This document shows, piece after piece, positions 38,253 through 50,200 of a DNA stretch of 64,000 nucleotides. A program made the translations under genes and the position numbers. Below the pieces are notes generated by a model, which did no database searches, was not told the origin of the DNA, and saw nothing but the letters and a program-made list of their open reading frames with translations. The stretch comes from Pocillopora damicornis (taxonomy: Eukaryota), in assembly GCF_003704095.1 (NCBI RefSeq), contig NW_020847586.1:248001-312000 (forward strand), in the 5' to 3' direction. The stretch's first letter is position 1; each line of letters opens with the position of its first letter.

Positions 38253-41200
38253 CTAGTAAAAGTCGGGTGTGCGTTTCGTCTCCGAAGTGTCAAATTCAGA
38301 GAGTGCCTGAATGGGCGACTCTTGTTTTACTTTCTCTGCACGCTGTAATTGTGGCACGCGGTCATCTTTCTCGAGGTTAACCAGCGGTTTCTTCTCCGGT
38401 GCACGCATACGCCAGGTGAGACTGGATCCCTAGATTCCGTGAAGGGAAAAGTTAGATGTTACCGAGAACAAGGTTTCAAAAAAATGGTATAGGTGACTTC
38501 AAATTCAAATTATTGTATTCCCGAGATCAAAAAGCTTGTTGCAAATAACAAAGTACCATTTGAATTGGAAGCCCTAACGATGTATCTAACTACACAACGA
38601 AACCCTCGCCTAAAGTTTCCTTAAATAAGAAGTTGAATTCCTCTCTTACCCTTGCATCTCCTGACTTGTGCTGTAAACCAGAAAGGAAACGTATAAATTT
38701 ATGTGTGACATCAAAAGATAAATTTCCAGTGATAAAACATTGATAAAATGTTCATTTAATTGTGTGGTTGACCCAACTCCCAAGAAACACAAGCTCAACC
38801 AGACAAAGAGATGCAGTGAGAATTAAGAGAGCGATAGCCATACCTTAGTATTAGCAACGTACGAGGCCTTCACTGTAGAAATGACAGCGTTCATTAGATT
38901 TTTGGCCGCTGTGATGAGAGAAGTAGCACTGTCCAACTGAAAGAAAATANNNNNNNNNNNNNNNNNNNNNNNNNNNNNNNNNNNNNNNNNNNNNNNNNNN
39001 NNNNNNNNNNNNNNNNNNNNNNNNNNNNNNNNNNNNTTGTTGTGAAATAACAATGATTCAAATGGAGATTAGAAGTTATCATGTTACTGAGGAGCAGTGA
39101 TAAAGACGAACTTACCCCGGACACTACAAGTTCACCACTGATCATCTGTACGTCAGCTTTCACTCGGGCTGTGATGGTCAGCTGATGGGAATATAGTGCA
39201 ATGCGCTGTATGTACGCTAACAGATCGTTCTTTGAACTTGAATCAGGACACTAATAAAAATATAGGTAGAAGTTGGTATATTAACCAAACGAAGGTACGC
39301 AACAGTTTCAAAAATCAAATCCCTGTTCTAGGATTTCGGTCAGTTCAGAAGAGTGAAAATGTCGAGCGAGAGGAACATAGCCTGTTCCTTCCAAATGCAA
39401 TTTTCACCCTCTTCACTAGTCTCCACCGAGTCAGAGTCTAGCACAAACTATACTCAACAAAGAGCTTAGAACCTCTAATCCACACAACAAAATTAGAGCG
39501 CTTTTTTAAAGAGCATTTTGGGCCCAGAAATCTATTTCAGCCGTTGCCAAAACATGTTGATCAATGATGCCTCCTTGAGTTAAGAATTTACCTTCTGTGC
39601 AATTTCAGTAGCTTTTTCATTCATCTTTCTTCCAGCTTTGGCAATTCTCTGAAGAATGAAGAACGAATAGAATAAACATTGATGGTCAATAAACACTGAA
39701 ATTCACCCAAAACACTGTTCCTTACCTTAGCAGCATCAATCACATCCATCGTAGTTTTCAGCGGTCCTGTTCCCCTGAAGTCAAAATGACAATAACAAAA
39801 TTAATGAAAATTTCACAATTTCATGGCTTATTGACGACAATTCTGTTTTCCAATAAAAACGGGGCCTGAGTTAGAGGTGTTATCAGAAGCATAATGACAT
39901 GATCGGAACAACCAGCATAATATTGATATCGTCCGTGACTCCGTTGCTAAACCCGTAACTCCCTTGAGTGACCAAGACAGATTTTCTCCTCACATATATC
40001 AGACAGACAAGTTATGAAAATAAAGATAAATATTAATTAGGGAATTACTAGTTGATCTAATACCAAAATTCTCCGATCTAACATAATGAGAATTGTATGG
40101 CAGACAGACTTTGGGGGTAGTGCCATACTCGGAAGCCTCGGAACCAGCATTACAATGGATAAATTTGCAACTACGACGATCTTAGTTTCAGAGGAGAATT
40201 TGCGGAATCAGATGAACACAAACACGTTCCGAATTCCTTACGACTCCAACTCCGTCGATCTTGCGGCTCCGCTTACGAACCCACCTTCCAATGTTCAATA
40301 CCTCGTGAGCGCTCCAACGAGCTCGTCTCCAACTTCGTTTCTGTCTCAAACTCAGACACTCGCAAAAACCATTATAAAAACGTACTCTACCTTGTGAAGT
40401 CGGACATTTCCATCATCATCATGCACATCTTCTTCGCCAGGATAATAATATCATTTCCACTTTCGTCCCATTTGGTCAACTCTCTTTCCAGCTTTTTCTT
40501 CTCTAGTTTCAGTCCCTCGGCCAGCTGTTCAATCTTAGCTTTTTCTTCTGCCGGCAGAGCTCTCATAAGGGACTGGAGACAAGATCAGAAATAACCAAGA
40601 ATTAATGTTGCAAACTCAAGACGACGATTATGTGACGTGTGTAGGAACTGAATACGTGAGACGGATTTTTTGGATTTAATTCCTGCGGATTTTCTGGATT
40701 ATCCACGAAAAAACAAAACAAAGTTATAATATATGTGGGAGAAAAAAGTGAAATATCATGAATGTAACTGACGTTTCTTTCCTAGACAATGTTCTTCTGC
40801 TTAAAGAGAAAGTCGAAAAAATTAGATCCAAAGGAAATTGCGGTACACTCAGACCGCAAAAATTTGCCCCGATACCGTCATCCTTCTTAATTACACTACC
40901 ACACAGCTTTCAAGCTACAAAACTTCCTCCTTCGCGACTGTATTTTTGCTTTAGTCATACGACACGCAACGCGCGACACGCGAAACTCGACACGCGAAAC
41001 ACTCCCTTGCCTACAGTAAATGAAAGATGACAAACAGTGGTATCTCCTACCCTTGCACTCCTCTTTGATATACTCTTATCCTTTTCCCATTCGTCAGTGT
41101 CATCAAACTCAGACCGTGCCTCATAATCAGAAACTGCTCCCTCAAATTCGTAATCCGACACTGGTTCGTACTCAGACTCCGCAGCTGTCATGGCGCCTAT

Positions 41201-44200
41201 AGACAATCCAAGAACAACAAAGTAAATATCTCACTAATCTCGGGTTATGGAATAGTAAATAACCCATTCAACCCACGAAATCTTACTTATTTCCTCCTCT
41301 GCTGACGGACTGGTCAGCATTTCTTCGATAACTGCAGGTCCCTGGTACCGCGGTTGGCTTATATTTTTTGCCCATTTAACTTGCTCGGGCCCTGTGTACC
41401 CCACGAAGGCCCAAGAGCCATGGAACCCAGGATGAACATTGCCTGTGGCACCTATCTCATAAAGAGCCTCCTTTGCGTCATTCACAGAAGTACCTGTTGA
41501 ATCAAGTGAGAAAAACCGTGAGAGTTAATGTTGGTAACTGGAAAAAGTAAAGTCAAAACTATGACGGTATTTAAGAAACAAAACACCTATCGATTTAAGG
41601 AACAAGTAATAAATGGCAACAACAGAGATGACTTTCTCTGTGAAAATTTTAAATTTAATAGTCGGTATAACAAATAGAACACACCGTCCAACTCAAACCG
41701 GCATGACGCCTAAAAATTCCCCTTAGACAATCAAATTACAGGCATAACTGTCAAATTAGTGCGCAAATCGGGCTTCCTATAACCAATCACGTTCAAGAAC
41801 TGCGACACAGTTTTGAACAATCGTTTGCCTGAACGTCATACTTGGTAATCACTGATTTGTGTGAAGATGCCACAAAGGTGCCCATAGATGCAACAAACCA
41901 TACTCACCAGTGGTTCCCTGGGTACCAATCAGCACTATCCTCTCCTGAGGAAGCTGTTGTAAGAACTTGGCCATCTTTGCCCCCTCCCCTTTAGACGGAT
42001 CTGCTGTGTCAAAGTTAGCCGCCATGATAAAGTTTCTGTCACTGTCCAGTATGACAATATTGTGTCCTCGCTGCATGGGCGATCTCTCGATGCCATTAAC
42101 TTTGATTGATGTTCGGCCTGTTCCCTTTGGATCATCTTCTCCGGTAGCGACGATCGCAACACGAACCATTCCTGAAACACCACAGCAATAGATGTTACAC
42201 GGGTATCACTTTTTATCACTGTTAATAAAATTACCAATACAAACGAGACTTGCTTCAAAAATAGTTCAATGAACCAACAGACTTCCGGTGTTCTGATGGA
42301 AAAGAGATTTCCTCTACAACACGCCCCAGTATTGGCGTATCTCACCATAGAGTATTCTGTAGCTCAATGGTGCAACATCGGAGGTCAAAGGTTAGAATCT
42401 TTCGGGGGACTCGGGTTTTTTCTAGCAGTATTGCTAATAATGTGAGAATCAAAGCAATTACTGTGAGAGTTCTGAACCAAAAACAAAACAACATGCCATC
42501 CTGTGATCCACTATGACTCTCATTTACTGGTACACATATCTACTAACAATCCACAAAGTCAAAAAATGGCTATCAGCAGCAAAACGAAAAATATTAACAA
42601 ATTAAGACAACGAACCTTTCTGTGCAGCTGGAGTGGGAATGAGTTGTGCCACAATTGCCGGTCCATGGTACCTGGGTCGCACCTCAGCTTTGGTGTAAAA
42701 TCTTGGTGCGGGTCCAGTACAGCCAGAGAAGGCGTAAGATCCATGAAAACCAGGGTCAAATGGTCCCTCTGCTCCAAGACGCTCCAGCGCTGGTGCTGCG
42801 GCGGCCACATTATTACCTAAAGATCAAACCAAGTAAAGCAATTTTCAATTCAGTGTCAAAAGTAAAGCATGGCTTCGCCCTCCTTCGTTATGTGACTGGT
42901 CTGGAGACCCAACACCACCCTTCCCACCGATTAGAATAAAAAAAAAACCCAGTTGCGACTTGGCGTTTCGTCGCCCTTCAGGAAACTTGCCTGTTTTCAT
43001 TTTCCAGTCACATTGAAGCCTTACAATATTTCCATCAGTTTTACTTATCGAATGCTTTTATTACTTTGGTTTTGGTTCATCACAGTGTATCCAATAAATT
43101 TTGGAGCCGCAAGAGGCAACACACTTATCTTCTGTCCCTTGCGTATGTAACAACTGTGTAGCTTATTTCATGTTAACATAACGCTGACGCGAACTTTGCA
43201 TTTTTAATGAAATTTTCTATCAAACGCTTGGTAGCAAGTTAAGAAAAAATAGCAGGCGCTTCGTTATCTAATCAGGATATCGAGACGATTGTAACGCGCC
43301 ATGACCAGGCCGATCGACCTCAAGAACCGTTCTCTTCGTTTTTAACCCTTACCCTGCTCTCGGCTTGTCAGCTCCTGTGTGGCCACAAGAACAACATGAT
43401 CCTCAGGAAGTTGGTTCAAAAACTGTCCCATAGCCGGGCCTTCCCCTGCATTTGTGTTAAAATTTCTGACTGCGTACACGTCACCAATCGGATCAAGTAC
43501 AACAACATTGTGCCCAGGCTTCCTGGGGCAATGTTCCACACCGTTCACCTTGATAGACGACACACCCATTCCCCCTTCATCTTCACCTCCCTCGGCTCGC
43601 ACTTCAAATTGTAATTTACCTGGAATGAAAAACAGAAATTGGGCAAACTTTTAAGTAAGCATTTAAAATAACATTGGTTTTTCTCTGCATTTTCCTGCAA
43701 AACTGGCGCCATCTTTCAACCAATCAGAAGCCAAATGAAAATCAATAGGGACTTGGTCACCCGCGTTTTCCCGCGCTTCATGTAGTTTGCTTGTCTTTAA
43801 TGTGATTTCTAAAAGGCTCCTGTCATATTTTCCTTGGTACCTCTTGTGTAACATTTTAATTGCGCTCATATTCAAGAATAGATTGAAGAGAATATGGTTT
43901 CACAGTATCGTGCATCATGGAACTCCTCACTGAACACTCTTGGCATGTGCGAGTTTTATCTTTTCTCTGAATAATCAATCACTTTGTTCTGTCAACATAC
44001 CACTCGCTTTGAGTTGTTCATAGGCAGCTTGTTCTCTGGCACGAGCCTGTGCCTCGGCAAACAGCACAGCAGCTGCATCCTCCATTTCCACTTCTTCACC
44101 AGGACCACCTCGTCTCTACGAAGACAAAAATAACAAAATGCAGATNNNNNNNNNNNNNNNNNNNNNNNNNNNNNNNNNNNNNNNNNNNNNNNNNNNNNNN

Positions 44201-47200
44201 NNNNNNNNNNNNNNNNNNNNNNNNNNNNNNNNNNNNNNNNNNNNNTCATCACATTATCAGTGTATGGCCCTTGTTGGTAGTTCTCCATTTCTGCAGTGAC
44301 CACATCTTCCAGTCTTGCTGTGCGTCCACGTATCTGTCCAGCAGTCCTGTCCACATTCTCGGGATCTCTCTCTTGCAGAGCCTGGACACATTTGTTCACA
44401 TCTTCCAAGACATGAGCCTCTGATGGATCACAACAGAGAACACCCTTTACACCCTAACATCAATGTCCAGATTCTCCATAGTTTTACCCTTCTCTATAAT
44501 TATACCATATTTCCTTTGTTACTGACCTTTATCAGAGGGAGAATTTGATTTTCTTGACCTTAATGTGTGATTCTGTATTCTAAAACCAAATTCCCCTAAC
44601 TACATGTAATTTACGAGGTTTGCATAGAAGCTGAAGGCAGGAATTAACAATCAGATCTTGTGAGTTGAAAGAGCTAAACAACACTGCACACTTAGTGACA
44701 AGGGCACAGACAGGATATTCCAGTAAGGGGTCTCTTTGAGGGATAAAACTGGTGATAGCATTCAAAATCACCTCATTATCATAAATTTAATCATCATTTA
44801 TTATTGATGAAGATGGTTGTCACAAACTTCCTTCCACTTCCTCTCATACAATCATTAAATGCACTTACCTGTAGTAGCTAAAAAGTCTTCAATTCCAGTA
44901 ATGTCATCAACAGCCTCAGTGAGAACCTGCAATTGCTGTTCCCAAGCCTCTTTGAACACATCCATATTTTCTCGAGCCACCTTACTGTGAGGACGGGCAG
45001 CAAGTGTTCGAGCAGCATTAATTACCTACAATTCATACATAAATACACATAATAAATGTCCAACTGTAAAGTTACTGCTTCGAATCTAAGTACAGAACAA
45101 AAATTGAGGCAAATTTTCCAAACCATACTTTTGAATAGTAGAAGTACAATACATACAGTTTTTGGAGCATACTTTTTCCATTAAAACTTTGATCCTTAAT
45201 TACAATCTCTGAGTCACTGTTTATGCAAAGTTGTTCTTACCTGAGGACACAAGTTTTGCAATCTCTTTGCTGCTAGTCTCACCATTTTCACCTTCTCAGG
45301 ATTCACTGACATTGAACAGGCAAGATTTGCCACCTGAAGAAACATGAAGAGCAAAAATTGTTTTGAAACAGATGAAATAATGTCAGGTTACTATGTAATC
45401 CTTTTGATAGAGATTCAGATAAAAAAATTAACCTATCCCTTAATCACCATGGATTTATTGCTTTAAGTTTTCTGATAGATTCATGTGTCTGTCCTCTTAA
45501 TTTGTTTTCCAGTATGGTAATGTATGATACAAAAAGAGAAAGCTAAAACTTACACTAAGGATGAAACTGAACAGTAACAAATATGCACAATGTAAACTAT
45601 TGAACCAAATAACTAAACTAATTAAAATGAAAAATCACCTCTTCAAGTTTTGCAGCATGGTCTGTAAATAACTTGGCACATTCTTCTACTTCTTTCTCAT
45701 TCCCAGCTTGAGCTGCTTCAATCATCATGATCAGAGGCATTGTGGTCTCCAAGAAAGAATCAGAAACATGATCCACAACTGCACGACGCAACTAGAAAAC
45801 AAAATCAAGAAATATTAGTGACTTTCCTTTAAAGTAAGAGCCCACATTCTGGCCAAGCACTGGTTGATTCAAATGGACTTGCAGATCCAGTCTGCAGCAG
45901 TAAGAGGAATGGAGTTACATGTAAGTAGACTTGCTTTAAAAGACGTCAGTGATTAAGCATCTTCAAGATGGAACTGAAAAGGCAGGATTCAGACTGATGT
46001 ATGAAAGGAGGAGGGCTAGTTTCACAATGCTAGAACTAGGGAATCTGGGTAGGTCAACACTCTAACCTCCTAGCATTCATCCCAGATTTTGATGACAGGT
46101 GTTTTCAAAGGCCTGCCAAAATCACTCTTAAGGGGAAAAATAAAATATCAAAAGCTGCCATATTCATGAATTATTTTACCTGGCCTCTCAGCTCCCTGGT
46201 TCGGTTACACATCCTTTCCAAGGCTTGGTCTAGAGACCCTCCAGGAGCAGCCTTCTTCTTTCCTGTGGCCTAAACACCCAAGAAAGGAAAACAAAATGTC
46301 AAAAGACTGTGACAAAGACTTAATTTCCACAAATACCAGATTCTGCAAAAACATCCCTATACCACAGCCTTGGCACTGAACAAGTCAATCTAAATTTTAA
46401 CCATTAACAACCTAACATCAGTATGCACAGTCTCCACTGTTCTCTACAACTTTGTATGGTACTGAAAAGGCAAATTTGCTGAATAATCCACAGCTTCTAA
46501 AGTTGATGATAACTCCTTATTCTTACGACTAAACAATTGATTCACCAGTGATACTGTAAGGAGAATTATGGGTCAACAGCTGGAGTATTAAAGCAGGTTT
46601 TAGATTGGACCACTGTCCTCAAAAAGTCCCATCAATTTACGATACGTGTTATCTGCATGAGTAATATGGAGTTCTTACATGATTCATATACTCTGACAGT
46701 AGATCCTGGAGAGCTTGCCGCACACCATTACAGCTTGCTATAATCTTGTCCCGTGTATCATCTCTTGTTGACATTGAGTCAGCTAACTGTGCTGCTCCAC
46801 TGATGATGCTTTCAAGACGCTGCTCCAATGTGGGACGGGTGCGCTTTTCAGAGTATGAAGTTGGATCCATGTTGATCTGGGACTGAAATACAAAGAAACA
46901 TGCACAGTTTAAGCTGTACTACATGACTGGATACTTTGAAAATAAAAAAGGAAGCTCATCCTAATAACTGGGTATTATGACACAATTTAATTAATCACAT
47001 GAATGTGATAAGATGGAATAGCTTTAGGTTATATTGGATAAGTATTCCTCTCAACATGTTCTATAAGTATCACTCAGCTAAGCACATAATGCAACATGAT
47101 GTTAAAATGCTTCTGCATAACTTTTGTATCAAAATGTCCCTCACTGCCATACCCAGTAATGGAAGGAGTGGCAATGCTGTGTGGTGACAGGTGCTCACTT

Positions 47201-50200
47201 TGAAATCTGGGGGTTCCAAGGTAAACTATGAATTGTGCCTTTAACTTATAAACAGATTTATCCATGGTTGTCCCATGTTCAATTCCCCTGTGGCACCTCA
47301 AAAGTAGTCCACTAGTTTGCCAACAACAGCTGAGACTGTAACCAGTTAATACTAGATATTCACTTATTTCCTTGCTTAGGCCTTACAGTGTCTGACTCAG
47401 TAAATTTCCAAACAGGTGCTAATTGCTTGATATTAGAAAAATTTGATAAAATTTGTTTTTCTTCACAATCTACTCACATCAAAGTCATCCAAAGCTGTTG
47501 CCAATGCCCCTGGAGTCTCATATGGGTGAGGTCCACCTGAGCCAGTAGCCTGTGTTGCCCCTGAAATGGCATTCACTGCTTCAGACATTTGCTTCATCAC
47601 AAAATCCCTGTTGGCTTTTGCAGAATCCACCTCAGGATGACGCACATAGGCCTAAAAGAAGCACAAAGGTCAGCACAATGCTAAAAAAAGTTCTCAATTG
47701 AAAAGTTTTATGAGACACCCAGGTACTTAAGTTTTGCAGAACTTACATGTCTCTAGGTGGGGGAGGTTTCCTGTATGTGTATGTAATTTTCCGACATCCA
47801 ACATTCATTGAAAGCAATACAAACCTAGAATTGTCTTTCAGTCATTGACAGATTTTAAAATAAGTCCCTAATGAAAATTGTGCAAATCTCCAGCTGTGTA
47901 GTCTCTGATCAAGGGGAGCTTTAAGCCCTTAATAATTAATTGAATGGTTTCTATTTCTTTTAACTGTTAAGTACAACTAAAAAATAACTGCTAAAATACA
48001 GCTGCTTTAGATTTGCAAAAGGTCAAGTAGAACTTGCCTAATAAACACTGATACAGCTGCAGATAATGATTTAAAGGAATTTACCTTGGAGGAGGACAGC
48101 AGCATTTTACTTGACTCTTTAAGAGTAGCCCTAGCAGCAGCCATGTCATCTTTCCTATGTGGATCTTTTAAGTCCTGAATATTTCAAGGAAACAAAAGTT
48201 GAATCATTAAATGGTGAATTCAGTGTCAGTTTAAACTGTCTGACCAAGAGGTCACAGAACCAAGAAACCTCTAGAAAACAATACTAAGATCACTTACTGC
48301 TTGTCTCTTGCCGGAAAGTTTTGCCAAGTCCATCAAATCATTCCCAAGATTCTTAAAAGAATTCAACAAGTCTGCAGTGTTACTAGCTTTTTCTAATTCC
48401 TTCAGTCTCTTCTCCACCTAACCAAAGTAAATAACAAAAATGATTCAAAATTAACTTATAAAACAACTACAAAATTAGATTAATGCTTAACGAGAGGGGA
48501 TTATATTTGTGTCAACAACTTTTTGTGACTCCTGAATCAGACCCATAACTGCTGACACATAGGATCTTCTGTTGGTCAAAGATGCTGATGCAGAGTATTT
48601 TGAACCACAGAGCAAAACTTCTAACCACTTGAAGAACACTTCTAACAATGATTTTGAATAACATGCAAAAAGTGGAACTAATAGCCATCGAAATTCATAT
48701 AGAAGGTGAGGATGGAAGAATCTTAATATCTCAGAAGGGAGAAAGAAGAAGGGGATGTTGGTATTACTGTTAGTATTAAATCAAAATGTTTTACTGACCA
48801 GTTTCAGTGAGGCAAGGAGGCGATACACATCTGCCATGTCAGCAACACACAACAACCTTGTAACAGAGGACAACAATGCCCGAGCAGCCCTGACCATTGA
48901 AGCTCTTTTGGCTGACGAACATGGATCATCTGCAAATTCTTTGGCTGCAATTCGCATTGAATCACCTGAAAAGCAAGATGAAAACCTTTAACTCTTGACA
49001 AATCTACTTGCAGTTACATATAAGAATTGTAAATTAAGAATTTTAACTAAGTACTGTACATAGCTAGCTGCTGGTAATTATTGCCAACCTTGTGGCTACT
49101 AGAATGTTATATAAATTTTCTGTTTAGTTACTGACAGCAATGATTTATATGTCCAATCTCCAATTATCCTACACTTAAGGGAAAGTTATGTCTGAGTTAA
49201 ATGAAAACTAAAAGAGAAATAATGAGGTCATGTTCAACCAGCAAGACAACATATTTTCAGAAACATCTATCCCTTCAAAATGTAAGGACAACTAAGGCAT
49301 ACAGATGATGTTAATAGACAAAACATAGCTTAATGATTAAAATACCATGCAAACATATTGAAAGACAAGATCAAATCTTTACACTTGAGAACATCAGACC
49401 TTATTTGGCTTCTTACTCAACTGCCTTGAAGAAGTTTAAAAAACAATTTAATGGCAATTCCACTGATAAAATCCAACTAACCCAGGCCATACCTGCACCA
49501 CGACAGTCCTTGCATGCTGCTAACATTTCTTCTCTGATTTCAGGAAACTCTTGAGCAATTTCCTCCCCTGTTTTTATAAGCCGAGCTGTAGCATCTTCAA
49601 TGTCTTGGGCAAGTTTATGGGCATTCTTAGACTTTCCAAGTTTGCTACCCTTTTTCTTTGGATGATTAACCAAGGTTGTTACCTGCAAACAAGGACATGT
49701 TTGACCACTGTCATGAAAAGGTCTTGTTTACACATGTACCCTGACAGAGATTTTACTTGTTTTCCAGGAAAGATGCACCTTACTTGAATTAATGATAGAG
49801 ACATAAAAAGGGCACTTAACCTTCAGAATTCAAGCATTTACATAATATTATTAGATAAAAAAATGCCATCACATGCAATTTCTTTCTATTTGAGGGCTTG
49901 TTTAGGGTTAAAATTTTTGGTGGTGGAAGCTGGTTGAAAATTTTTAGGGAAACTTAACCCTCTTTATAGCACTTGAGACATGGAGATCATTGCTGTGTTA
50001 GTGGCACAAATTGCTCCATCCTTTTGAAAGACTGAATTACAAATTTTGGGGGCACCATTAACTTTGGTCCAGGGAAATAACTTTCTTTTTCTATCCACTG
50101 TGAAGTTTGGTTTGTCATGATCTCTTAATTCAAAATAATGTCACGACATAAAATATGACAGGGGAAAAAATTGTGAATACACACTGACATGTTCAACTAC

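What the first reader, a model, noticed from the sequence alone, without database searches (positions are those of the whole stretch)
41287..44115. Alpha-catenin carrying two tandem ILEI/GG-type lectin-like domains between the M domain and actin-binding domain
Seen in sequence: five extra in-frame exons (~351 aa) separate the M3 region from the acidic linker/ABD exons. Four of them encode two paralogous ~156-aa repeats (SIKVNG-[PR]GHN[VI]V[VI]LD-NF[ND]T-FL.QLP-V[VL]L..TQ-[LI]GA-PGFHGS[YW]AF.G-PRY.GPA). Established knowledge: this pattern is the ILEI/PANDER/GG fold of FAM3 proteins, the POMGNT1 stem and CEMIP/TMEM2, which are normally luminal or extracellular. Bilaterian alpha-catenins have only a short phospho-linker here. 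Inference: a lectin-like module has been placed in the cytosolic force-sensing hinge of the cadherin-catenin complex. It could be a new ligand or partner dock, possibly an O-GlcNAc or lipid sensor, or a mechanical spacer tuning junctions in this lineage. An insert in cnidarian alpha-catenin may have been noted before, so novelty of the domain assignment needs a literature check.
Basis: partly seen in the sequence, partly recalled or inferred. Interest (0 to 1): 0.92.

Follow-up and report, generated by a model that had tools for sequence, protein, structure and literature searches.

The report
Coral alpha-catenin with ILEI-domain insert
This coral's alpha-catenin gene carries two FAM3/ILEI-fold domains between its force-sensing region and its actin-binding domain; the same insert was published for the sea anemone Nematostella in 2016 as unique to that species, but here it turns up in sea anemones, stony corals, soft corals and hydrozoans.

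Summary
Five in-frame exons on the minus strand (44115-41287, 351 codons) lie between the M3 and linker/ABD exons of an alpha-catenin gene. RNA contigs from three independent studies carry all six predicted junctions. Four of the exons encode two ~156-aa repeats. These are ILEI/FAM3-fold domains by Pfam PF15711, by PDB sequence hits, and by an AlphaFold model (pLDDT 87) whose only significant Foldseek hits are TMEM2, the POMGnT1 stem and FAM3A/B/C.

It is not new as a kind. Clarke et al. 2016 (PMC4948710) described this insert in Nematostella alpha-catenin, noted the two ILEI-like regions, and showed that deleting it weakens F-actin binding more than 10-fold. They called it unique to Nematostella, and that claim does not hold. 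The Vinculin-ILEIx2-Vinculin architecture occurs in Scleractinia, Actiniaria, Octocorallia and Hydrozoa. Repeat 1 and repeat 2 form separate clades that each mirror the species tree. The exon borders are shared, and dN/dS is 0.03.

The repeats lack the cysteine pair seen in most secreted relatives sampled. In corals they also lack the POMGnT1 GlcNAc-binding triad, so a lectin role is unsupported. The best reading is a conserved, folded cytosolic spacer that keeps the actin-binding domain uninhibited.

The parts
38256..51271 (-). Whole alpha-catenin gene: N, M1-M3, insert, linker and ABD exons
   Evidence: tblastn of Stylophora alpha-catenin P0072 against the window gives ordered exon hits from residue 1 (51271) to 1268 (38256). 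PF01044 exon matches lie on both sides of the insert. P0072's best PDB hit is catenin alpha-1 at 1000 bits, against 183 for vinculin.
44146..44245 (.). 100-N assembly gap that cuts the last M3 exon. About 60 codons (P0072 residues 574-633) have no counterpart in the window.
   Evidence: RNA contigs bridge from exon A into unplaced upstream sequence (loose end at 44116). The gap was not filled.
44001..44115 (-). Exon A: 38-codon Ala/Glu/Gln-rich leader of the insert. It starts in phase 0 and ends in phase 1.
   Evidence: joint 43616>43998. No Pfam match. 89% identical to Stylophora, with an indel.
43353..43619 (-). Exon B: N-terminal half of ILEI repeat 1, phase 1-1
   Evidence: PF15711 at 36.2 bits. 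87 of 88 residues identical to Stylophora, dN/dS 0.015. RNA joints on both sides.
42616..42816 (-). Exon C: C-terminal half of ILEI repeat 1, phase 1-1
   Evidence: 100% identical to Stylophora. Aligns with exon E. RNA joints on both sides.
41908..42171 (-). Exon D: N-terminal half of ILEI repeat 2, phase 1-1
   Evidence: PF15711 at 34.5 bits. It is the closest relative of exon B in the whole genome, at 46%. RNA joints.
41287..41493 (-). Exon E: C-terminal half of ILEI repeat 2, phase 1-1
   Evidence: PF15711 positions 59-89 at 21.1 bits. RNA joints.
41051..41196 (-). Exon F: acidic Ser/Asp/Glu-rich linker, by position the counterpart of the bilaterian phospho-linker. It starts in phase 1.
   Evidence: It is the least conserved segment, 22-29% identical between coral and the hydrozoan or octocoral sequences.
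40390..40572 (-). First ABD exon after the linker
   Evidence: PF01044 positions 660-722 at 74.5 bits. RNA joint 40572>41051.

Best explanation
The stretch encodes the coral orthologue of the 'novel insert' described in Nematostella alpha-catenin. It consists of a short helical-looking leader (exon A) and two tandem ILEI/FAM3-fold domains of about 156 aa (exons B+C and D+E), spliced as the predominant form seen between the M3 bundle and the acidic linker/ABD.

Shown here:
- The insert is in the mature mRNA.
- It has the ILEI fold.
- It occurs in alpha-catenins of Hexacorallia, Octocorallia and Hydrozoa.
- The two repeats were already distinct before those lineages split.
- It is under purifying selection as strong as that on the ABD.
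- It has lost the cysteine pair found in most of the secreted relatives sampled.

Inferred:
- The module was captured once, probably by exon shuffling of phase-1 domain exons from a secreted tandem-ILEI gene. This happened in the cnidarian stem lineage.
- It works as in Nematostella, as a rigid folded spacer in the hinge. [quoted passage not shown] It does not work as a sugar-binding lectin.
For: Splicing: all six junctions appear in RNA contigs of three studies, and no exon-skipping joint was listed. The share of words held by the RNA runs (0.30-0.38) equals the exon fraction of the stretch.

Identity: PF01044 exons flank the insert. Stylophora P0072/P0071 are 95-100% identical to exons B-F and carry them contiguously at residues 634-1031. 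P0072 scores 1000 bits to catenin alpha-1 against 183 to vinculin.

Fold: PF15711. PDB sequence hits to FAM3C, FAM3B, the POMGnT1 stem, TMEM2 and FAM3A. AF2 model with pLDDT 87.2 and pTM 0.74. All 21 Foldseek hits at E<=0.001 belong to TMEM2, the POMGnT1 stem or FAM3A/B/C, with TM 0.67-0.77 on the target.

Distribution: proteins carrying PF01044+PF15711 are named catenin alpha-2(-like) in Stylophora, Orbicella, Actinia, Dendronephthya, Paramuricea, Clytia and Hydractinia, and an Actinostola model has the same pair of domains. A full-length hydrozoan-like mRNA, L010, has the same architecture.

Age: in the tree, all alpha-catenin repeats form one clade (99/96). R1 (92/91) and R2 (92/84) each mirror Hydrozoa|(Octocorallia,(Actiniaria,Scleractinia)). 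The same four-exon layout is present in an octocoral contig and the same exon borders in a Hydractinia exon.

Constraint: dN/dS for exons B-E is 0.03, against 0.02 for the ABD and 0.08 for N-M. Coral-hydrozoan identity is 42-47% in R1/R2, against 50-58% in N-M and ABD.

Cytosolic adaptation: the cysteine pair is found in 15 or more of 22 secreted ILEI domains and in 0 of 26 alpha-catenin repeats.

Mechanism: in Nematostella the insert is a protease-stable 37-kDa unit. Deleting it lowers F-actin affinity from 0.8 uM to at least 12 uM (PMC4948710).
Against: The mechanism rests on one published in-vitro study in one species. Nothing here tests actin binding of the coral protein.

Conservation as strong as in the ABD, with about 70 invariant columns among the 12 sequences aligned, is more than a passive spacer would seem to need. 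It may point to a specific partner or ligand.

Repeat 1 of two hydrozoan-like sequences keeps the complete R/D/R sugar-binding triad.

Contigs cannot exclude a minor isoform that skips B-E, which would stay in frame.

No donor gene with the same intra-domain intron was found.

The Nematostella sequence itself could not be fetched. Orthology to it is inferred from position, size, domain content and two other sea-anemone orthologues.
Confidence: 0.7

Rival explanations
1. The repeats are a working cytosolic lectin or small-ligand sensor (for example for O-GlcNAc) docked in the alpha-catenin hinge.
For: The fold is that of the POMGnT1 stem and FAM3C/A, which bind GlcNAc in vitro (PMC9802357; fold match). 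Purifying selection is very strong. The R/D/R triad is intact in repeat 1 of two hydrozoan-like sequences, L010 and P0069.
Against: In this coral the triad reads P/E/H (R1) and R/G/H (R2). No R2 in any of 12 species has the full triad, and only 2 of 12 R1 do. A function conserved across the phylum cannot rest on residues that are not conserved.
Confidence: 0.1
2. The ILEI pair is a docking platform for a cnidarian-specific protein partner at junctions. Relief of autoinhibition would then be a side effect.
For: Conservation equals that of the ABD, with many invariant residues. A pTM of 0.74 for the two-domain model suggests a fixed R1-R2 arrangement. FAM3C itself is active as a dimer (PDB 5lc4 title).
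Against: No partner is known. Nothing here identifies an interface, and the Nematostella data explain an effect without a partner.
Confidence: 0.15
3. The cassette is optional. Because A ends and F starts in phase 1, B-E can be skipped in frame, giving a bilaterian-like short-hinge isoform used in some tissues.
For: The phases read from the sequence allow it. An earlier scan note says the same. NCBI lists isoforms for Hydractinia.
Against: No A>F joint appears in four RNA runs, while all inclusion joints are present at the full contig depth. The tool states that contigs drop rare variants, so a minor form is not excluded.
Confidence: 0.1
4. Artefact: a nested ILEI gene inside an intron, or a misassembly across the N gap.
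For: An N run lies directly upstream of exon A.
Against: Single RNA contigs run from M-domain sequence through A-F into the ABD. Independent Stylophora, hydrozoan and octocoral records have the same order.
Confidence: 0.01

Closest known systems
Nematostella vectensis alpha-catenin 'novel insert' (Clarke, Miller, Lowe, Weis & Nelson 2016, Mol Biol Evol 33:2016; PMC4948710)
   Same: The position is the same, between the M domain and the ABD (Nv residues 638-1021; here residues 634-1031 of the Stylophora orthologue). The size is similar (362-384 aa against 351 plus linker). Both have two regions matching Pfam ILEI PF15711. Other sea anemones (Actinia, Actinostola) carry clear orthologues 65-67% identical to the coral insert.
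   Different: The paper states that the insert is unique to N. vectensis and absent from other cnidarians. Here it is found in Scleractinia, Actiniaria, Octocorallia and Hydrozoa. The paper gives no structure, exon structure or evolutionary history.
FAM3 family (FAM3A/B/C; ILEI, PANDER), Pfam PF15711
   Same: The beta-beta-alpha ILEI fold is shared. Sequence E-values to FAM3C/FAM3B are 2e-5 to 3e-4 with the single sequence and 2e-9 to 9e-7 with the repeat profile. Foldseek TM is 0.67-0.69 on the target.
   Different: FAM3 proteins are secreted single-domain proteins. Here two copies sit inside a cytosolic cytoskeletal protein, with no signal peptide context and without the cysteine pair of most secreted cnidarian relatives sampled. 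The R/D/R triad is not kept.
POMGnT1 stem domain and the GG domains of TMEM2/CEMIP
   Same: These are the best structural matches: 5ggj with TM 0.74-0.77, and 8c6i with the best E-value.
   Different: Those domains are luminal or extracellular carbohydrate-binding modules attached to enzymes. The GlcNAc-binding residues R129/D179/R207 are replaced in the coral repeats.
Cnidarian secreted tandem-ILEI proteins (ILEIx3 + F5/8 type C, with or without EGF; e.g. Oculina LOC144642389, a Montipora uncharacterized protein)
   Same: These are the closest relatives of the insert outside alpha-catenin, at 33-36% identity over 93-97% of its length. Their ~155-aa ILEI units are also head to tail, with phase-1 borders at the domain edges.
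   Different: Each unit keeps the SEGC..CG cysteine pair. In this genome the units have three exons per domain with different internal intron positions, so they are not demonstrably the donor.
Bilaterian alphaE/alphaN-catenin hinge (phospho-linker)
   Same: The same junction lies after the ..DIRKAVL.. end of M3, and an acidic Ser/Thr-rich segment precedes the ABD (the P-linker itself is from established knowledge).
   Different: PDB alignment shows vertebrate alpha-catenin passing from residue ~640 to the ABD without any folded domain. The cnidarian protein has about 350 extra residues there.

Membership tests
alpha-catenin (vinculin superfamily, PF01044) | [quoted passage not shown] | tested here: met
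   PF01044 exon matches cover profile positions 16-554 upstream and 660-833 downstream of the insert. The 95-100% identical Stylophora protein scores 1000 bits to catenin alpha-1 (residues 11-641 and 1019-1258) against 183 bits to vinculin.
alpha-catenin (vinculin superfamily, PF01044) | Binds beta-catenin and F-actin | not testable with these tools
   Shown only for the Nematostella orthologue in PMC4948710.
ILEI / FAM3 domain (Pfam PF15711) | Score above the Pfam gathering cut-off (27 bits) | tested here: met
   Window exon B scores 36.2 bits and exon D 34.5 bits, each a half-domain only. Full repeats score 105 bits with 2 stretches in Stylophora, 111.6 in L010, 102.3 in Hydractinia and 113.9 in Dendronephthya.
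ILEI / FAM3 domain (Pfam PF15711) | Three-layer beta-beta-alpha FAM3/PANDER fold | tested here: met
   AF2 model of the Stylophora insert (97-100% identical to window exons B, C and E, 95% to D): pLDDT 87.2. The Foldseek significant hits are only TMEM2, the POMGnT1 stem and FAM3A/B/C, with TM 0.67-0.77 on the target. The window's own spliced protein was not folded, because the joined step was left out.
ILEI / FAM3 domain (Pfam PF15711) | Secreted or luminal location with a disulfide-stabilised N-terminal loop | tested here: not met
   The domains lie inside a cytosolic protein between M3 and the ABD. The cysteine pair is present in at least 15 of 22 secreted ILEI domains and in 0 of 26 alpha-catenin repeats.
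GG-type / POMGnT1-stem-type lectin | GlcNAc-binding residues equivalent to POMGnT1 R129, D179 and R207 | tested here: not met
   Mapped through the 5ggj alignment onto. Coral R1 reads P/E/H and R2 reads R/G/H. The triad is intact only in R1 of two hydrozoan-like sequences. The residues are taken from PMC9802357.
GG-type / POMGnT1-stem-type lectin | Measured carbohydrate binding | not testable with these tools
   Needs glycan arrays or resin pull-downs.
Nematostella-type alpha-catenin hinge insert (Clarke et al. 2016) | Folded insert of about 360-380 aa between M and ABD containing two ILEI-like regions | tested here: met
   compared with the paper's residues 638-1021 and its PF15711 note.
Nematostella-type alpha-catenin hinge insert (Clarke et al. 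2016) | Direct sequence orthology to the N. vectensis protein | not tested
   The Nv sequence did not appear in the two protein searches and was not typed in. Two other actiniarians are 65-67% identical to the coral insert and branch as sister to Scleractinia in both repeat clades.
Nematostella-type alpha-catenin hinge insert (Clarke et al. 2016) | Deletion lowers F-actin affinity (relief of autoinhibition) | not testable with these tools
   Published for Nv only.

The most novel reading that the evidence does not exclude
The ILEI pair may be more than a spacer. It could be a cytosolic ligand- or glycan-reading module (for example for O-GlcNAc-modified junction proteins), retained since the cnidarian ancestor. 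Hydrozoan repeat 1, which keeps the R/D/R triad, would preserve the original binding mode. That would make it the first lectin-fold sensor built into the cadherin-catenin force chain.
Probability: 0.08. Interest if true: 0.8.

Novelty: new member of a known kind. Interest (0 to 1): 0.4.

Why it matters
The published picture treats the alpha-catenin insert as a Nematostella oddity, and so treats Nematostella's constitutive, force-independent actin binding as possibly species-specific. The insert is instead present in both anthozoan subclasses (Hexacorallia, Octocorallia) and in Hydrozoa, and it is under selection as strong as that on the ABD. The altered hinge is therefore probably a property of cnidarian adherens junctions in general. 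That bears on whether force-gated (allosteric) actin binding by alpha-catenin is ancestral to animals, the open question named in that paper's discussion.

It is also a clean example of an extracellular-type module moved into a cytosolic protein, with loss of its cysteine pair. The experimental models Clytia and Hydractinia carry the insert too, so the question can be tested genetically.

Tried and rejected
1. The representative-library search with exon B returned only exon-sized genomic fragments and secreted or bacterial multi-ILEI proteases. It gave no full-length alpha-catenin.

A 9-sequence alignment worked.

3. L003 and L004 looked like transcripts by match position but have no long ORF, so they are genomic.

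4. I looked for a donor gene with the same intron layout. ILEI genes on C3082 and C1053 have a phase-0 intron directly after the FAVK strand. The closest secreted family, on C4317, has three exons per domain. Neither matches the alpha-catenin layout, so no donor was identified. The whole-protein search with P0081 was swamped by discoidin exons.

5. The POMGnT1 structure paper was not held under the id I tried. The residues were taken from PMC9802357 instead.

6. A nested gene or misassembly is rejected on RNA evidence.

7. dN/dS for exon A is not usable, because an indel against Stylophora put the codons out of register.

8. Steps left out by rule:
- The window's exons were never joined into one protein for any search or fold. 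Each was searched by reference.
- The natural cDNAs L014 (Stylophora) and L010 (hydrozoan-like) stood in for the spliced product.
- The N run was not filled. The 30-letter loose end printed by read laying was only read in frame, and was not searched for.
Full report
**What is in the sequence**

The gene lies on the minus strand. Reading 44450-40900 gives five exons with canonical AG/GT borders:

| Exon | Coordinates |
|---|---|
| A | 44115-44001 |
| B | 43619-43353 |
| C | 42816-42616 |
| D | 42171-41908 |
| E | 41493-41287 |

- Exon F (41196-41051) follows and encodes an acidic Ser/Asp/Glu-rich linker.
- Exon A starts in phase 0 and ends in phase 1. B, C, D and E are all phase 1-1, and F starts in phase 1.
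- B+C and D+E are two ~156-aa repeats. Their halves are 42-46% identical.
- A 100-N run (44146-44245) cuts the preceding exon.

**Is it spliced into alpha-catenin?**

Yes.
- PF01044 (Vinculin family) exon matches run from window 49688 down to 44247 (profile 16-554) and resume at 40572-38838 (profile 660-833). The only ILEI matches on this contig lie in between, on the same strand.
- RNA runs hold 0.30-0.38 of the sampled words of 40380-44130, which equals the exon fraction.
- Contigs of four RNA runs were laid on 40300-44140. Runs X2, X7 and X13, from three studies, carry all six junctions at the predicted bases. X1 carries two.
- Single contigs (X2 record 14, 2250 nt; X7 record 19, 3249 nt) run from far upstream through A-B-C-D-E-F towards the ABD exon. 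X2's lies on 40390-40572; X7's is joined to it (29 letters on that side).
- The loose end at 44116, read in the frame of exon A, is ..DIRKAVLAGR. This is the end of the M3 bundle, so the tail of M3 sits in the N gap.
- No joint skipping B-E was listed, but contigs cannot exclude a rare form.

**Independent records**

- The window's exons were searched one by one, by reference.
- A JGI metatranscriptome contig (L010) has a 1215-aa ORF with the architecture Vinculin-ILEIx2-Vinculin.
- Using its insert as the query region returned named proteins with PF01044+PF15711 from Clytia, Hydractinia, Stylophora, Orbicella, Paramuricea and Dendronephthya, and an unnamed Actinostola model. A second search added Actinia.
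- Stylophora P0071/P0072 are 95-100% identical to window exons B-F and carry them contiguously at residues 634-1031.
- P0072 scores 1000 bits to catenin alpha-1 (its residues 11-641, plus an ABD match at 1019-1258) against 183 bits to vinculin.
- The organism is a coral by the run labels and a close relative of Stylophora. From memory only, the assembly size and contig count match the published Pocillopora damicornis assembly.

**What the repeats are**

- Pfam ILEI matches exon B at 36.2 bits and exon D at 34.5 bits (cut-off 27). Exon E matches at 21.1 bits for the C-terminal part.
- The Stylophora cDNA segment L014:2105-3043 hits FAM3C, FAM3B, the POMGnT1 stem, TMEM2 and FAM3A in the PDB by sequence. 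A profile of the repeats does so more strongly.
- An AlphaFold model of that segment, built on a 12-sequence alignment, has pLDDT 87.2 and pTM 0.74.
- All 21 Foldseek hits at E<=0.001 are TMEM2, the POMGnT1 stem or FAM3A/B/C, with TM 0.67-0.77 on the target. After them the E-values jump to about 0.1.

**Already known**

Clarke et al. 2016 (PMC4948710) reported the following for Nematostella alpha-catenin:
- a 362-aa insert in the hinge (deletion construct 638-1021);
- a protease-stable 37-kDa core;
- a drop in F-actin affinity from 0.8 uM to at least 12 uM when the insert is removed.

They concluded that it relieves an otherwise autoinhibited conformation. They also wrote that the insert is unique to N. 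vectensis and absent from other cnidarians. In the held library, no other paper links ILEI, catenin and Cnidaria.

**What is new here**

1. The 'unique' statement does not hold. The insert is in Scleractinia, Actiniaria, Octocorallia and Hydrozoa.

2. The tree dates the duplication.
   - In a maximum-likelihood tree of 26 repeats and 22 outside ILEI domains, the alpha-catenin repeats form one clade (99/96).
   - R1 (92/91) and R2 (92/84) each reproduce Hydrozoa|(Octocorallia,(Actiniaria,Scleractinia)).
   - Capture and duplication therefore predate the Anthozoa-Hydrozoa split.

3. The four-exon layout, with the split after the ..TQxxxG strand, is shared by an octocoral genomic contig (L002). 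The matching borders of the first exon are shared by a Hydractinia genomic exon (P0009).

4. Constraint is strong.
   - Between the window and the Stylophora cDNA, exons B-E have 59 synonymous and 7 non-synonymous differences, giving dN/dS 0.03. The ABD gives 0.02 and N-M 0.08.
   - Coral-hydrozoan identity is 42-47% in the repeats, 50-58% in N-M and ABD, and 25% in the acidic linker.

5. The SEGC-x(7-11)-CG cysteine pair occurs in at least 15 of 22 secreted ILEI domains and in 0 of 26 alpha-catenin repeats. Single remnants survive in some lineages. This fits a move to the reducing cytosol.

6. The sugar-binding triad is not conserved.
   - It consists of POMGnT1 R129/D179/R207, which is conserved in FAM3 proteins (PMC9802357).
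   - Mapped through the 5ggj alignment, it reads P/E/H and R/G/H in this coral.
   - It is complete only in R1 of two hydrozoan-like sequences.

**Origin**

- The nearest outside relatives are secreted cnidarian proteins with three head-to-tail ILEI units plus discoidin, with or without EGF domains. They are 33-36% identical to the insert.
- In this genome, exon B's closest relative is exon D (46%). Everything else is 37% or less over a comparable length.
- The own-genome copy of the secreted family (C4317) has phase-1 borders at the domain edges, like the cassette. However, it has three exons per domain.
- Other ILEI genes have a phase-0 intron elsewhere in the domain.
- Exon shuffling of a phase-1 module is therefore plausible, but the donor is not identified.

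**How it most likely works**

- Shown: it is a folded, conserved pair of ILEI domains in every alpha-catenin transcript contig seen here.
- Taken from the literature: in Nematostella, the insert is needed for high-affinity, constitutive F-actin binding.
- Inferred: the same holds across cnidarians. The pair would act as a rigid spacer between M3 and the linker/ABD that prevents head-tail inhibition.
- I put about 0.9 on the identity and history, and about 0.55 on this mechanism.
- The degree of conservation leaves room for a specific partner (0.15). A true lectin role (about 0.1) is weakened by the missing triad.

**Verdict**

The feature is real and correctly recognised, but its kind is already published. 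The added value is a correction of its phyletic range and a first account of its structure, history and constraint.

Noticed in passing
window 43654-43790 (intron between exons A and B): A short stretch has RNA contig depth 85-1236, far above the flanking intron. Many loose ends fall at 43750 and 43778-43789, and there are non-canonical 'joints' to 42857/42865. It looks like a dispersed repeat transcribed from elsewhere in the genome.
   Followed up: no
window 40573-41050 (intron between exon F and the first ABD exon): Contigs of X13 (record 11, joined to exons D-E-F), X7 and X1 run into or through this intron. Read in frame, it would stop 31 codons after exon F and give an ABD-less product. 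It may be only unspliced pre-mRNA.
   Followed up: partly
window 44146-44245: The 100-N run hides about 60 codons of M3 (Stylophora residues 574-633 have no match in the window) and the start of the following intron. It was not filled.
   Followed up: partly
G000:C4317 ~75-106 kb (L019): A secreted tandem-ILEI plus discoidin gene, the closest non-catenin relative of the insert. It has three exons per ILEI unit and keeps the SEGC..CG cysteine pair. Discoidin-domain exons are hugely expanded across several contigs (C2019, C847, C4228, C2136).
   Followed up: partly
L010 (JGI Ga0314668_10001588) and P0069, repeat 1: Repeat 1 of these two hydrozoan-like alpha-catenins keeps all three residues equivalent to the POMGnT1 GlcNAc-binding triad (R/D/R). 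All anthozoans, Clytia and Hydractinia do not.
   Followed up: partly
exon B/C junction, window ~43365-43353 and 42816: Hexacorals (Scleractinia and Actiniaria) have four extra residues (..REQG..) at the exon B/C junction that octocorals and hydrozoans lack. This is the only indel in an otherwise gap-free 313-column alignment.
   Followed up: no
P0079 (Actinostola sp., 1566 aa): The deposited model fuses a CNNM-like CBS/CNBH segment in front of alpha-catenin. This is most likely two neighbouring genes merged by the annotation.
   Followed up: no
window 51161-51271 and 49491-49793: Stylophora residues 1-37 match at 51271-51161 (97%), and residues 5-100 also match at 49793-49491 (70%, with gaps). 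This may reflect an alternative first exon or an HSP overrun.
   Followed up: no
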